Below, in pieces: positions 611 to 46,028 of a stretch of DNA of 64,000 nucleotides. Position numbers and translations under genes: made by a program. The notes beneath the pieces are model-generated. The model did no database searches. It saw only the letters and a list, made by a program, of their open reading frames with translations, and was not told the DNA's origin. The stretch's first letter is position 1, and each line of letters begins with the position of its first letter. This DNA is from Mytilus edulis (taxonomy: Eukaryota), in NCBI RefSeq assembly GCF_963676685.1, contig NC_092347.1, forward strand, positions 73,222,001 to 73,286,000. Reading direction: 5' to 3'.

Positions 611-683
611 TAGTTAAAACATTACTTTTCTCATATTTCAATCCTTATATTAATTAGAAATAAGTTTTTCAAGATACAGCAAA

Positions 684-3600
684 ATGATGTTTGATACGAA
701 AATGTCTGCATGCTTTATAACGCATTCTCTTTGCACGATAGGTATGTCTTTAGATTTTCTGCAAAATGCTTAAAAGGTTAAATATCGTTATTTAAAATAT
801 AAAATATAAAATATCTTTAGCCACATTTTTTAAAAATTTCTGATAACACAATCACTAGGTACACGAACTTTTAAAAAGCATTTTGAAATTGTCAACGTTT
901 AAATTAAAGGGCTTGTAGTTTACTCTGCGGGTGAATTTAAATATAACCCTTTAACGTAATGTTTTTCAGCGAATTTTTTATTGAAGATTACAAACATGAT
1001 TGGTTACTAACGTGAATTATATTTCTATTTAACAGCAATTCTTACATCGCTGTTTTCGAGGGTAAAGACAACACCAACAGGCGCCGAGCGATGGCGACAT
1101 CCTTGTGGAATATCCAATACTGACACCAGCCATTTTCCACCCGTACCTACACGACCACTTGTTGAGATTATTACTGGTATGCTAGTATTGATAAAAGAGG
1201 GACAAGAATATTCAAGCAACCTTCAAGAGAAATTTGTAAGTATTTCCTTATAATTTTGCTTAAAACAGTGCTAAATTTCATTTACAAAAGGCGCAGAAAC
1301 ATGTATGCATGTACATGTAAAAGTACTTTTTGACTATCAACTATTATAAATATAGATAACCTTTTTGGGCTTTTTTTTTATATTAAGTCAGTGGGTTGTT
1401 GTATAATGCAGCAAATATTGTAGATGGAAAGTGAAGTGAAACTACTAGTATCGCGCATTTTTGCTAGAAAATCATTCTTACCGTTAATATTTTAAATTAT
1501 TTAAATCCATGTTTAAGGAAATTCATAAGCTATCTTATTCATTTTATCAGTAAAAGAATGTTTAAAAATTCATTCATAAATTTAACTACACGGTCGGTGA
1601 TTTTTCTTTTTAGTTATAGTAAACAATACGAGAAAAATATGTCACTATAATTCTCAGAATACGGAAGTAAAAATTAAGGTGTAAGAAACGTGATCTAATG
1701 ACATATATATCTGGATTTAAAATACAATTCATAACCCGGTTATCGCACTACAACAGCGGACTTGTTTTACGTTATATGAAATTATTTTGTCAAAATATTT
1801 GAAAAAAAAGCGTTAACTAAATTAATTGTCAAATATGAGTACTGAAAAAAGAGAAATAAATTGGTGTTTTGAGTGTTTAATTCTACATATCTATATTAAT
1901 ATATCTCCTTATTTTTAAGTGTCATAATTATAAATCGATATTATCTTGTTTAAATATGTACAGTATGTATTAATACTTGATAAAAGATAAAATTATTAAC
2001 TATTCAATTAACGGATGTAGTTTTTGTGAATAAACAAAAGTGTTACAATCATTTCCATTGGTCAGTTGAATCTTCCCACTTGTGTTCAATATCATCCTCT
2101 TTGATTTTTAGGCCATGGAGCGAGTGCAAAGTATGCGACATGTGGCATTTCTGAATAGCCTTCATCATGATGGATTTCCAAATGTTAAAACTGCGACGGA
2201 AGGGGATATACAAAATTCCGTAATCAATGTAAGTTTACATTATTATTGAAAAGTATATTCTAATAACAATGTTTATCTTTAAAAATGAATTAAGGAATAT
2301 TATTATCTTTAAAAACGCCAAATTGAATCTTTTCGTTTCAATTTTATGTTGTTGATAAGTGTTGGCAATGTTTGAATAAATATATACAGCACGTTATTGT
2401 TATCGAAGGGGAAGTTACCAAGGGTCAAATTCCAAAAATGACAATAGAAAATGGGAAATCCTGCAAAATATGCTTAACTTTGAAAAAAATCAAATTTCCC
2501 AGTATACTATGATCATGATTATGCTCTATGTACTAAACATAAAGTACATATACAATACCTAAACATATATACAATACAAACGAATTTTTCTATCGATTCA
2601 TTACCCTAAAAAAAAATAATACAATATCAAAACGTTCACATTACAAGTGTATATTCAAATCTTCATGCGTACCTTTATGACGAATGCAACTTTAAAACCA
2701 AGAATTCTATGCTCTTTAGAGCTATCGTCGATACTTCGATTTTAATCATTCTTTACAAAATTGAGAGACATGTAGAAAACAAGATGGTTGGTTGATAAAT
2801 AAGTCTCCTACAAGTTGCTTCCAGCTATGCATTATATTATTACTCTATATATAGGTAATTATTCTCTATGCTTCATATTTTTAAAGTACCTTGTTATTCT
2901 ACAAGTTGCTACCAGCTATGCATTATATTATTACTCTATATATAGGTAATTATTCTCTATGCTTCATATTTTTAAAGTACCTTGTTATTCTACAAGTTGC
3001 TACCAGCTATGCATTATATTATTACTCTATATATAGGTAATTATTCTCTATGCTTTATATTTTTAAAGTACCTTGTTATTCTACAAGTTGCTACCAGCTA
3101 TGCATTATATTATTACTCTATATATAGGTAATTATTCTCTATGCTTCATATTTTTAAAGTACCCTGTTATTCTTTATTCTCTAATTTTTTAGTTCATTTT
3201 CCTCTATTCTTTTTTTTAATCCATAATTATCTATTCTTTAAAACCCTATCCACAAACTCTTTACTAACACAATTTCTACGTTGTATGTATTTATAATTTG
3301 TTTTTGATATGTAAACAATCTTACAATGACAGAATGATTACTAATGTATTTTTTTATTATTATTTCAGGTACCGAAAACTCATTTAGACAGCTACAGAAC
3401 TTTAGCAATTGCTTTGGTCTTCATCGAAAAGATGAAGTTTGACGAAGATATATACGAAAACAAAAAATATTCCAATGAAATTCTTATTATGGAATCGAAA
3501 CTTTACGACATCCTCTGTCATATGGATGAAGTTATAAGCACAAATGGAGACAGCATTGAACACGTGACACGTGAAGTTATGAGCAGGGAACTGCGCGCGC

Positions 3601-3719
3601 ATTCGGAAAGAACAACCCGTTTCGCTCGAGATTACATAACAGTGAAAGATACTTCTAAAATCATGGACTATTTAATTGTTCAATACTCAGCTTTAAAAAA
3701 TCATATCCAAGAAAGCTAA
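684..3719 (+). CDS. Gene 1: secreted helical cytokine-like protein (Unpaired/IL-6-like candidate), 4 exons, 241 aa
   Basis: Exons 684-741, 1036-1235, 2112-2228 and 3369-3719 are all GT-AG bounded (phases 1,0,0) and join into one 726-nt ORF: MMFDTKMSACFITHSLCTIAILTSLFSRVKT/TPTGAERWRHPCGISNTDTSHFPPVPTRPLVEIITGMLVLIKEGQEYSSNLQEKFAMERVQSMRHVAFLNSLHHDGFPNVKTATEGDIQNSVINVPKTHLDSYRTLAIALVFIEKMKFDEDIYENKKYSNEILIMESKLYDILCHMDEVISTNGDSIEHVTREVMSRELRAHSERTTRFARDYITVKDTSKIMDYLIVQYSALKNHIQES*. It has a hydrophobic signal peptide, an alternative in-frame ATG at 702 and four amphipathic segments. The gene model is well supported; the family call is inferred. Confidence 0.88.
2808..3171. repeat. Intronic minisatellite, 4 x 91 bp
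   Basis: Near-identical units CTACAAGTTGCT...CTTGTTATT start at 2808, 2899, 2990 and 3081, inside gene 1 intron 3. Confidence 0.95.
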
Positions 3720-4149
3720 GAAAATCAACAGCTTATTCAATCTTGAGGTAAATCAAGAGGAACTCGAGTAGATTATATTAATCAACTGTAAGTGGTGTCC
3801 ACTATATTGTGTTGTGATATTTACGTATGTGCTTTGGAATTATAGTTCGCCTTTTATGCTGACGCTATAAGAAGTTTCATATATATATACAACATTCTAA
3901 GTAGAATTTCCGTTTAAACGACGATGACAATCCGATGTTTTCATTTGAGAGAATGAGATATAGTTGAGATGAACGAATTTCCAAAGTATAATACATAATC
4001 TATAATTTACTCTTTACATGAAAGTTTAATGGGTTCTGTGATAATTGTATATCTGTGACTGTGATACATGTTAAATTCTGGGCATTAGGTTTTGAAATTT
4101 ACATCATTTTTTTATATTGTATTGTTTTAATATTGTTTTATCGTTAGTC

Positions 4150-45600: not shown

Positions 45601-46028
45601 CGTAACATATCTTAAAAACTGCATTTTGATTATGTGGAAATAGTATGCAAACCATATAATAAAGTAAAATAAATGTTTTATACTTAGGGCGACTATATTC
45701 TATTCATTCAATTCAAAATTGATTATTATTGCAGACAAGCTGTTTTGAAGAGGACCTTGCACCAATTGAAAATTTGATGAGGTTCATAAACAGTTATATG
45801 TCTTCAAGTTATTCTACAGAAATTGTGAGCATTACATCCGAGTTATCTGTGATCCGCGAACTTATGGGTGGAGATGCAATAGATATGTCAAATATATTTC
45901 AATTAAAGAGTTTAACCCAGAACACGGATACAGATTACATTGCTGCAAAGGATACAGATTACATTATTGCAAAAGATACTCTCAATTTTATCAATAAACT
46001 TAAACAACGCTACGAAACACGTGTTTAA
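42098..46028 (+). CDS. Gene 2: secreted helical cytokine-like paralog, 4 exons, 190 aa
   Basis: Exons 42098-42106 (MKP|gtaagt), 42905-43069, 44103-44207 and 45735-46028, all phase 0 and GT-AG: MKPTLLISILCLGYFVRTSYA/LPILCSNESPGNILRLRILDRIHSNALSLAESLKLKTSSHVSDLLKQLLDHAAPPSGFPSISSNASCSDCNQTSCFEEDLAPIENLMRFINSYMSSSYSTEIVSITSELSVIRELMGGDAIDMSNIFQLKSLTQNTDTDYIAAKDTDYIIAKDTLNFINKLKQRYETRV*. Exons 2-3 are clearly homologous to gene 3, and the GFP and DYIxxKDT motifs are shared with gene 1. Confidence 0.85.
43770..44015 (+). mobile_element. Repeat family B (PLE 3' end) in gene 2 intron 2
   Basis: Near-identical to 56240-56492, the 3' UTR of the PLE at 55538. Further copies are at about 6670-6905, 14845-14980, 17835-18010, 27065-27260 (all minus) and 54195-54388. 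Confidence 0.85.

What the first reader, a model, noticed from the sequence alone, without database searches (positions are those of the whole stretch)
1036..3719. Gene 1 carries the WxxPCG ... LC ... RDY signature recalled from arthropod Unpaired-like proteins
Seen: the mature protein has only two Cys (WRHPCG near the N-terminus and KLYDILCHM in the third helix). Candidate helices are A (LVEIITG...FAMER), B (HLDSYRTLAIALVFIEKM), C (YSNEILIMESKLYDILCHMDEVI) and D (RFARDYITVKDTSKIMDYLIVQY), with long AB and CD loops. Intron phases are 1,0,0, and a phase-1 first intron followed by phase 0 is the IL-6 family pattern. From recall, not a search, Upd-like proteins have an N-terminal WxNPCG motif. 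Inference: gene 1 is the conserved, ancestral-type member, linking the ecdysozoan Upd family to lophotrochozoans.
Basis: partly seen in the sequence, partly recalled or inferred. Interest (0 to 1): 0.85.

Follow-up and report, generated by a model that had tools for sequence, protein, structure and literature searches.

The report
Mussel homologue of insect Unpaired cytokine
This expressed four-exon mussel gene encodes a secreted four-helix protein that is a clear relative of the insect JAK/STAT cytokine Unpaired and folds like vertebrate IL-11/IL-6, so it is a strong candidate for the JAK/STAT ligand that recent papers say has not been found in molluscs.

Summary
Exons 684-741, 1036-1235, 2112-2228 and 3369-3719 (+), with intron phases 1,0,0, encode 241 aa. 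cDNA contigs from four studies carry exactly these three GT..AG joints.

The protein differs by one residue from an unnamed Mytilus edulis protein. Only two Cys lie outside the signal peptide: C43 in WRHPCG and C175 in helix C. Both are kept in about 92 of 93 relatives.

The best structural matches are IL-11 (Z 18.6), CLCF1, OSM, CNTF, LIF and IL-6.

The family occurs in molluscs and an annelid. A mollusc/annelid-only profile matches an arthropod-only profile at hhalign 99.85%, E 7e-31. That arthropod family includes the sequence deposited as 'Unpaired [Gryllus bimaculatus]' (BLASTP to the mussel protein E 9e-9). It also gives recurrent hits, all below the curated cut-off, to Pfam PF15972 Unpaired (10 of 78 members, best E 7.6e-5).

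Receptor binding and JAK/STAT activation are inferred, not shown. Three points remain open:
- 'Ancestral-type member' is not shown.
- The Cys-Cys distance was not measured.
- The intron-phase argument was not tested.

First readers of this scan noted other candidate four-helix cytokine genes in this window and 122 kb downstream.

The parts
633..741 (+). Exon 1: 5' UTR from about 633, ATG at 684. Encodes residues 1-19 plus the first base of codon 20 (signal peptide); phase-1 donor GT at 742.
   Evidence: Sequence. The cDNA contig of run X1 starts at 633 behind a SMART template-switch oligo and joins 741 to 1036. A TATA-like 'tatatat' lies about 25-30 nt upstream of 633.
1036..1235 (+). Exon 2: end of the signal peptide, mature N-terminus with WRHPCG (nt 1092-1109, Cys43) and most of helix A (from nt 1158).
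   Evidence: Translation; joints in contigs of X1 and X2; family HMM positions 18-84, E 5e-20; AlphaFold helix 61-89.
2112..2228 (+). Exon 3 (phase 0/0): end of helix A (..AMER) and the AB loop with the conserved H-x-D-G-F-P turn.
   Evidence: Translation; joints 1235|2112 and 2228|3369 in 2 and 4 runs; HMM positions 83-123, E 2e-8.
3369..3719 (+). Exon 4: helix B (3369-3455), helix C (3471-3542, Cys175 at 3516-3518), CD loop, helix D (3609-3713, RDY at 3627-3635) and stop TAA at 3717-3719. The 3' UTR runs on beyond 3900.
   Evidence: Translation; HMM positions 120-235, E 1e-46; phmmer hits; AlphaFold helices; contigs of 4 runs cover 3369-3900.
2808..3173 (.). 91-bp x 4 tandem repeat inside intron 3. 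It is not coding and is absent from the cDNA contigs.
   Evidence: TRF, 98% matches; no contig depth there.

Best explanation
Gene 1 encodes a secreted long-chain class-I helical cytokine of about 214 residues after signal-peptide removal. It is a lophotrochozoan member of the protostome Unpaired (Upd-like) family. The fold is an up-up-down-down four-helix bundle. The N-terminal W-x-x-P-C-G segment is most likely tied to helix C by the single conserved Cys43-Cys175 disulfide, as the N-termini of LIF and OSM are tied (my recall). By homology with insect Unpaired and by its IL-11/IL-6/CNTF-like shape, it most likely binds a Domeless/gp130-type class-I receptor on mussel cells and activates JAK and STAT. 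The conserved aromatic in R-D-[YW] at the start of helix D may play the part of the site-III Trp/Phe of IL-6-family cytokines.

Shown: gene model, transcription and splicing, family membership, fold, homology to a deposited cricket Unpaired.

Inferred: secretion, the disulfide, the receptor, JAK/STAT activation and the site-III reading.

The confidence of 0.7 is for the whole statement. Homology to the Unpaired-like family alone I put at about 0.9, and the JAK/STAT ligand function at about 0.6.
For: - Gene model and expression.
- The public M. edulis protein P0059 differs by 1 aa.
- 58 relatives were found by single-sequence phmmer of exon 4 against 1.84e9 proteins. They include scallop, oysters, ark clam, gastropods, the annelid Owenia and a beetle at E 3.6e-4.
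- Non-circular profile-profile link between lophotrochozoans and arthropods: 99.85%, E 7e-31, 203 columns.
- Link to the deposited Gryllus 'Unpaired': E 4e-17 by profile and 9e-9 pairwise. One ant member is named 'unpaired-like protein [Lasius niger]'.
- Pfam PF15972 Unpaired is the most recurrent Pfam family among arthropod members (10/78, best E 7.6e-5). The matches are colinear, running from the W.NPCG segment to helix C.
- AlphaFold model: pLDDT 87.6, pTM 0.81.
- VIA-align: IL-11 Z 18.6 (rmsd 2.2 A, 164 of 165 residues), CLCF1 17.5, OSM 16.6, CNTF 16.5, LIF 16.4, IL-6 16.3. The first non-cytokine row is at Z 9.6. The Foldseek top 50 are all long-chain cytokines.
- The cricket Unpaired model (pLDDT 91.6) gives the same ranking, with IL-11 at Z 18.1.
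- ESM-Atlas neighbours are GH/PRL, IL6, LIF_OSM, IL11 and CNTF clusters at 0.92-0.96.
- Both Cys are near-universally conserved.
- A STAT DNA-binding domain is present in this genome. PMC13203501 reports IL6R-like, JAK and STAT together in molluscs without a known ligand.
- Cricket and cockroach Upd knock-downs phenocopy Dome/Stat knock-downs in leg regeneration.
Against: - No functional data exist for any mollusc member.
- Pfam PF15972 hits neither the mussel proteins nor the mussel genome directly, and arthropod hits stay under its 27-bit cut-off.
- No Drosophila or other dipteran or lepidopteran sequence was retrieved, so the last step to Upd1-3 is indirect.
- No sequence-level match to vertebrate cytokines in PDB.
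- Exon-level searches for IL6Ra-bind and the JAK FERM_F1 domain in this genome were blank, which is inconclusive.
- The Cys-Cys distance was not measured.
- No N-glycosylation sequon is present.
Confidence: 0.7

Rival explanations
1. Same family and fold, but the mussel protein (and perhaps the whole non-dipteran 'WxNPCG' family) signals through another class-I receptor. A candidate is the orphan CRLF3, whose endogenous ligand is unknown in insects. Alternatively it acts as a leptin/GH-like hormone rather than a Domeless ligand.
For: CRLF3 is conserved across eumetazoans and has no known ligand (PMC8063046). No member of this family was found in Diptera or Lepidoptera. Structural matches also include placental lactogen (Z 16.8), GH (13.8) and leptin (11.9).
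Against: The cricket member is the deposited 'Unpaired'. The cricket literature treats Upd as the JAK/STAT ligand that drives proliferation in leg regeneration, and in the cockroach a gene called Upd gives the same knock-down phenotype as Dome and Stat. The best structural neighbours are gp130-family ligands. The family was seen only in protostomes, whereas CRLF3 is pan-eumetazoan.
Confidence: 0.15
2. It is a molluscan interferon-like (class-II helical) cytokine of the kind reported from oyster as CgIFNLP. In that case a member has already been studied under another name.
For: PMC9756803 lists the oyster CgIFNLP as a helical cytokine with low sequence identity to vertebrate IFNs and a receptor that activates JAK/STAT genes. 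Fish and mammalian type-I IFNs appear in the structural list at Z 10-12.
Against: IL-6/gp130-family ligands score far higher (Z 16-18.6) than IFNs. The sequence homology is to Unpaired.
Confidence: 0.05
3. It is a secreted helical-bundle protein with no cytokine role, and its resemblance to IL-6-family folds is convergent.
For: Helical bundles give middling Z-scores by arrangement alone (note). There is no sequence link to vertebrate cytokines.
Against: Z 16-18.6 with near-complete coverage stands well above the approximately 13 bar that the tool's note gives for helical bundles and above the first non-cytokine row (9.6). The topology, with long AB and CD loops, is specific. Homology to a functionally studied insect Unpaired is significant.
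Confidence: 0.05

Closest known systems
Insect Unpaired / Upd-like outside Diptera: Gryllus bimaculatus Unpaired (BBG28436.1), 'unpaired-like protein' of Lasius niger. Nasonia upd-like and honey-bee Updl genes are known from the literature.
   Same: Homologous over the whole mature protein (hhalign E 7e-31 between the phylum-level profiles; BLASTP E 9e-9 to cricket Unpaired). Same order of motifs: W-x-x-P-C-G, H/Y-x-D/W-G/L-x-P turn, Y-x-x-L-x-x-x-A-V-x-L-E-Q, L-C, R-D-[YW]-x-I-x-[KR]-D. Same two Cys. Same predicted fold and same nearest PDB neighbours.
   Different: About 20-25% identity. The mussel protein has a plain signal peptide, whereas many arthropod isoforms carry a long N-terminal extension with a conserved R-D-Q-R-T motif before the hydrophobic segment. 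Arthropod sequences are far more conserved (AVGLEQ, RDWIIFRDYMN) than molluscan ones, which sit on long branches. Mytilus has at least 9 paralogues.
Drosophila Upd1, Upd2, Upd3 (Pfam PF15972 'Unpaired'), ligands of Domeless
   Same: Pfam's Unpaired model is the top recurrent family for arthropod members of this family. The matches are colinear, profile 16-177 of 273. Both are secreted JAK/STAT-type helical cytokines (the Drosophila function is established knowledge).
   Different: All hits are below Pfam's cut-off, and there are none for the mussel protein or genome.
Vertebrate gp130/IL-6-family cytokines (IL-11, CLCF1, CNTF, LIF, OSM, IL-6, IL-27p28)
   Same: Long-chain up-up-down-down four-helix bundle. 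IL-11 Z 18.6, rmsd 2.2 A over 164 of 165 residues; CLCF1 17.5; OSM 16.6; CNTF 16.5; LIF 16.4; IL-6 16.3. Weak Pfam IL11 hits in 3 arthropod members, best E 0.019. The disulfide from the N-terminal segment to helix C recalls LIF and OSM (my recall, not tested).
   Different: No significant sequence similarity. It lacks the two local disulfides of IL-6/G-CSF. Common descent rather than convergence is not shown.
Oyster CgIFNLP (interferon-like protein), as listed in PMC9756803
   Same: A molluscan secreted helical cytokine candidate linked to JAK/STAT genes.
   Different: It is described as class-II/IFN-like.

Membership tests
Protostome Unpaired / Upd-like family (as represented by deposited insect Unpaired sequences) | Significant sequence homology to a protein deposited and studied as Unpaired | tested here: met
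   P0175 is letter-for-letter BBG28436.1 'Unpaired [Gryllus bimaculatus]'. BLASTP P0059 vs P0175: E 9e-9, 24% identity over 229 columns. Lophotrochozoan profile vs P0175: 98.8%, E 4e-17. Versus the arthropod profile: 99.85%, E 7e-31.
Protostome Unpaired / Upd-like family | Conserved motif set and the two conserved Cys (N-terminal W-x-x-P-C and helix-C L-C), plus R-D-[YW] at the start of helix D | tested here: met
   Alignments A1, A3 and A4. Cys conserved in 14/15 and 15/15, and in 77/78 and 78/78 rows.
Protostome Unpaired / Upd-like family | Secreted: N-terminal signal peptide | tested here: inconclusive
   A hydrophobic stretch at residues 9-26 is followed by a polar segment, and AlphaFold puts a helix at 6-26. 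No signal-peptide predictor was available.
Protostome Unpaired / Upd-like family | Binds Domeless-type receptor and activates JAK/STAT | not testable with these tools
STAT_bind is present in the genome.
Pfam PF15972 Unpaired (curated model built on Drosophila-type Upd) | Score above the curated gathering cut-off (27 bits) | tested here: not met
   No hit for the mussel exons, for 15 lophotrochozoan proteins or for the mussel genome. Arthropod members reach at best E 7.6e-5; the individually listed scores are 11.9-18.3 bits.
Long-chain class-I helical cytokines (IL-6/gp130 ligand type) | Up-up-down-down four-helix bundle with long AB and CD loops | tested here: met
   AlphaFold pLDDT 87.6 with helices 61-89, 126-154, 160-183 and 206-240. 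IL-11 Z 18.6, and the top 13 VIA rows are all class-I helical cytokines, as is the Foldseek top 50.
Long-chain class-I helical cytokines (IL-6/gp130 ligand type) | Match to Pfam IL6, IL11, LIF_OSM or CNTF, or to a solved cytokine, by sequence | tested here: not met
   None at E up to 10 for the mussel protein. PDB profile searches were blank. Only weak IL11 hits in 3 arthropod members, E 0.019.
Long-chain class-I helical cytokines (IL-6/gp130 ligand type) | IL-6/G-CSF pattern of two local disulfides | tested here: not met
   The mature protein has only two Cys, 132 residues apart.
Long-chain class-I helical cytokines (IL-6/gp130 ligand type) | Shared intron positions and phases with IL-6-family genes | not tested
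   Phases 1,0,0 are confirmed for the mussel gene.

The most novel reading that the evidence does not exclude
The W-x-x-P-C ... L-C ... R-D-[YW] family is the ancestral protostome ligand of the Domeless/gp130 receptor lineage and shares descent with the vertebrate IL-6/IL-11/LIF group. On this reading long-chain gp130-type cytokines predate the protostome-deuterostome split, Drosophila Upd1-3 are fast-evolving outliers of an otherwise well-conserved family, and the 'missing' JAK/STAT ligand of molluscs, annelids, Hemiptera and other groups has been present but unrecognised.
Probability: 0.4. Interest if true: 0.85.

Novelty: new member of a known kind. Interest (0 to 1): 0.7.

Why it matters
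Recent papers state that no IL-6-like ligand is known for the IL6R-like/JAK/STAT module of molluscs (PMC13203501, 2026). They also describe Upd ligands as poorly conserved or 'absent' in many insect orders, including all studied Hemiptera (PMC13535093, 2026).

The evidence here points to one conserved protostome family, present in bivalves, gastropods, an annelid, Collembola, a copepod and many insect orders, Hemiptera included. It contains a functionally studied cricket Unpaired and folds like IL-11/IL-6.

That gives bivalve immunology and regeneration research a concrete ligand to express and test. It also makes the question of whether gp130-type cytokines are older than bilaterian divergence directly testable.

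Tried and rejected
- Pfam scan of the three exon peptides: nothing at E up to 10.
- Pfam PF15972 against the mussel genome: only noise, E 9.9.
- Profile searches of PDB sequences with the lophotrochozoan and arthropod alignments: nothing meaningful.
- Three word-indexed protein searches and two ESM-Atlas look-ups found no dipteran or lepidopteran member and no protein named Upd1-3.
- I tried to tie the cockroach, thrips and honey-bee 'Upd' or 'Updl' genes of the literature to these proteins through accession numbers or primers. The main texts gave none and the supplements were not held or did not list them. The tie came instead from the depositor's name on the cricket sequence.
- Family HMM against all six frames of the window: gene 1 is the only clear member. 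The ORF at 45723-46025 shows just a D-helix-like D-Y-I-I-A-K-D-T motif (HMM E 0.003; hhalign probability 47% over 24 columns), so the window's other putative cytokine genes are not confirmed as members.
- Exon-level searches of the genome for IL6Ra-bind and JAK FERM_F1: blank and inconclusive.
- No complex prediction was run, because no receptor sequence was available by reference.
- The joined 241-aa model was assembled only inside scripts, for counting and for comparison with retrieved proteins. It was never sent to a search or fold tool. Searches used the exons by reference, and the public protein P0059 (1 aa different) served as proxy.
- The bacterial promoter scan is irrelevant for this eukaryote.
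Full report
**1. The observation**

The window is AT-rich eukaryotic DNA (about 31% GC). It comes from a 1.37-Gb chromosome-scale assembly, position C4:73.22 Mb.

Reading the sequence gives four coding exons on the + strand: 684-741, 1036-1235, 2112-2228 and 3369-3719. All introns are GT..AG, with phases 1, 0, 0, and the product is 241 aa. The finding's start (1036) is exon 2; exon 1 encodes most of the signal peptide.

The model is confirmed in two independent ways.
- The joined product differs by a single residue (F53L) from a public, unnamed Mytilus edulis protein (P0059, CAG2248678.1). It differs by 3-5 residues from M. galloprovincialis and M. edulis entries. The genome is therefore a Mytilus.
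- Contigs of four public runs from four studies carry exactly the joints 741|1036, 1235|2112 and 2228|3369. One 1013-nt contig spans all four exons and begins at 633, right behind a SMART template-switch oligo. It is therefore cDNA, and transcription starts near 633.

Cys residues stand at 10 and 17 (signal peptide), 43 (WRHPCG) and 175 (helix C). R-D-Y is 212-214. There is no N-glycosylation sequon.

**2. How the searches were run**

Searches used the exons by reference, and P0059 served as proxy for folding and alignment. The joined sequence was assembled only inside scripts, for counting and for comparison with retrieved proteins.

**3. The family**

Pfam finds nothing in the exon peptides.

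Single-sequence phmmer of exon 4 against 1.84 billion representatives gives 58 hits. The named ones are all 'uncharacterized':
- Mytilus spp., the scallop Ylistrum, the oysters Ostrea, Saccostrea and Crassostrea, and the ark clam Tegillarca;
- the gastropods Gigantopelta and Elysia;
- the annelid Owenia;
- the beetle Acanthoscelides, at E 3.6e-4.

In 15 full-length sequences P42, C43, Y134 and C175 are invariant.

The mussel genome holds at least nine last-exon matches:
- C4:73.14-73.23 Mb, four genes, including a 95%-identical twin 41 kb upstream of gene 1;
- C4:77.44-77.47 Mb, with weaker matches out to 77.57 Mb;
- C14:40.63-40.65 Mb.

The exon boundaries fall at the same profile positions in the paralogues, about 84 and about 120. 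Within the window, gene 1 is the only clear member.

**4. The arthropod link**

A profile of the 15 sequences finds dozens of arthropod proteins at E 1e-16 to 1e-60. They come from Coleoptera, Hymenoptera, Hemiptera, Thysanoptera, Orthoptera, Blattodea, Ephemeroptera, Phasmatodea, Collembola and a copepod. That profile contained two arthropod-like rows, so I repeated the test without circularity.
- A mollusc/annelid-only alignment (A3) against an arthropod-only alignment (A2) gives hhalign 99.85%, E 7e-31, over 203 columns, from the W-x-x-P-C-G segment to the C-terminus.

**5. Is that arthropod family Unpaired?**

Three lines of evidence say yes.
- Depositors' names. P0175 is letter-for-letter GenBank BBG28436.1, 'Unpaired [Gryllus bimaculatus]'. 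An ant member is named 'unpaired-like protein [Lasius niger]'.
- Function in the literature. The cricket literature treats Upd as the JAK/STAT ligand that drives proliferation in leg regeneration. In the cockroach, knock-down of a gene called Upd phenocopies Dome and Stat knock-down.
- Pfam. PF15972 'Unpaired' is the most recurrent Pfam family among 78 arthropod members (10 members, best E 7.6e-5). The matches are colinear: profile positions 16-177 of 273 align from the W.NPCG segment to helix C. Because Unpaired was the hypothesis named in advance, a whole-library E of 7.6e-5 for that one family among 24,736 is strong. Every hit is nonetheless below Pfam's 27-bit cut-off.

Direct comparisons with the mussel side:
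- mussel proxy against cricket Unpaired by BLASTP: E 9e-9, 24% identity over 229 columns;
- lophotrochozoan profile against cricket Unpaired: 98.8%, E 4e-17.

What is missing is a residue-level comparison with Drosophila Upd1-3. No dipteran or lepidopteran protein was retrieved, and PF15972 hits neither the mussel proteins nor the mussel genome.

**6. Fold**

AlphaFold2 with the 15-row alignment gives pLDDT 87.6 and pTM 0.81.

The Foldseek top 50 PDB matches are all long-chain helical cytokines. E-values are weak (from 0.02), but target-normalised TM-scores reach 0.83 for IL-11.

VIA-align against 48,161 representative chains gives the ranking below.

| Chain | Z |
|---|---|
| IL-11 (rmsd 2.2 A, 164 of 165 residues) | 18.6 |
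| CLCF1 | 17.5 |
| placental lactogen | 16.8 |
| IL-27p28 | 16.6 |
| OSM | 16.6 |
| CNTF | 16.5 |
| LIF | 16.4 |
| IL-6 | 16.3 |
| type-I interferons | 10-12 |
| first non-cytokine row | 9.6 |

The cytokine scores are above the approximately 13 bar that the tool's note gives for helical bundles.

A model of cricket Unpaired (pLDDT 91.6, pTM 0.89) gives the same order: IL-11 18.1, CLCF1 17.2, IL-6 16.2. Its W-I-N-P-C-G segment is placed with pLDDT about 86. ESM-Atlas feature neighbours are GH/PRL, IL6, LIF_OSM, IL11 and CNTF clusters at 0.92-0.96. Sequence profiles find no solved vertebrate cytokine.

**7. Mechanism**

Shown: an expressed, spliced gene; a signal-peptide-like N-terminus; membership of a protostome family that includes insect Unpaired; an IL-11/IL-6-like four-helix fold.

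Inferred:
- The only two conserved Cys (14/15 and 15/15 in lophotrochozoans, 77/78 and 78/78 in arthropods) most likely form a disulfide. It would pin the N-terminal segment to helix C, an arrangement I recall from LIF and OSM. The distance could not be measured because the tool gives no coordinates.
- The conserved R-D-[YW] at the start of helix D sits where IL-6-family cytokines carry their site-III aromatic (my recall, untested).
- By homology the protein should bind a Domeless/gp130-type receptor and activate JAK and STAT. A STAT DNA-binding domain is in the genome. PMC13203501 reports IL6R-like, JAK and STAT in molluscs 'in the absence of a canonical IL6 ligand'.
- My exon-level searches for IL6Ra-bind and JAK FERM_F1 were blank and are inconclusive.

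**8. Rivals**

- The same family might act through another class-I receptor such as the orphan CRLF3, or as a hormone.
- It might be related to the oyster interferon-like protein CgIFNLP, which I could not test.
- The fold might be convergent.

I give these 0.15, 0.05 and 0.05.

**9. 'Ancestral-type member'**

An ML tree puts all arthropods in one clade (100/99) and leaves the molluscs unresolved on long branches. Gene 1 groups with another Mytilus paralogue (98/95).

**10. Novelty**

All database names for the lophotrochozoan members are 'uncharacterized' or 'hypothetical'. Ten full-text searches found no paper describing an Unpaired or IL-6-type ligand in molluscs or annelids, and 2026 papers state that none is known. 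The library does not cover subscription journals, so prior work cannot be excluded.

I class the finding as a new member of a known kind. It has above-average interest because it supplies a missing pathway component and shows that the Upd family is conserved across protostomes.

Noticed in passing
G000:C4:73182086-73184507 (about 41 kb upstream of the window's gene 1; locus L002): A near-identical tandem twin of gene 1 (95% aa identity in exon 4) with the same exon spacing. Further paralogue clusters lie at C4:73.137 and 73.193 Mb, C4:77.44-77.57 Mb and C14:40.63-40.65 Mb. Together this is a lineage-specific expansion to at least 9 genes.
   Followed up: partly
window 45723-46025 (+): An ORF ends in an internally duplicated T-D-Y-I-A-A-K-D / T-D-Y-I-I-A-K-D-T...Y motif that resembles the family's helix D (HMM E 0.003; hhalign probability 47% over 24 columns). 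It is possibly the last exon of a very divergent paralogue, the 'gene 2' of another first-reader note.
   Followed up: partly
window 2808-3173: A 91-bp unit repeated 4.0 times at 98% identity inside intron 3 of gene 1. It is not present in the cDNA contigs.
   Followed up: yes
alignment A2 (arthropod orthologues such as P0100, P0105, P0112, P0124): Many arthropod isoforms carry a 60-130-aa N-terminal extension with a conserved [RK]-D-Q-R-T motif upstream of the hydrophobic segment, while shorter isoforms lack it. This may mean alternative first exons, or a membrane-anchored pro-form of insect Unpaired-like proteins. The mussel protein has no such extension.
   Followed up: no
proteins P0098 (Rhodnius), P0214 (Bemisia), P0137 (Macrosteles), P0139 (Lycorma): Clear members of the Unpaired-like family exist in Hemiptera (E 2e-72 to 2e-83 to the arthropod profile for P0139 and P0098; P0214 E 1e-63 to a wasp member), although a 2026 review states that Upd ligands appear absent in all studied Hemiptera (PMC13535093). 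Sub-threshold Pfam scores probably explain the reported absences.
   Followed up: partly
window 3572 (T>G in all four runs) and 1134 (T>C in two runs): The cDNA contigs differ from the assembly at a few coding positions. These are probably alleles or closely related Mytilus species among the runs.
   Followed up: no
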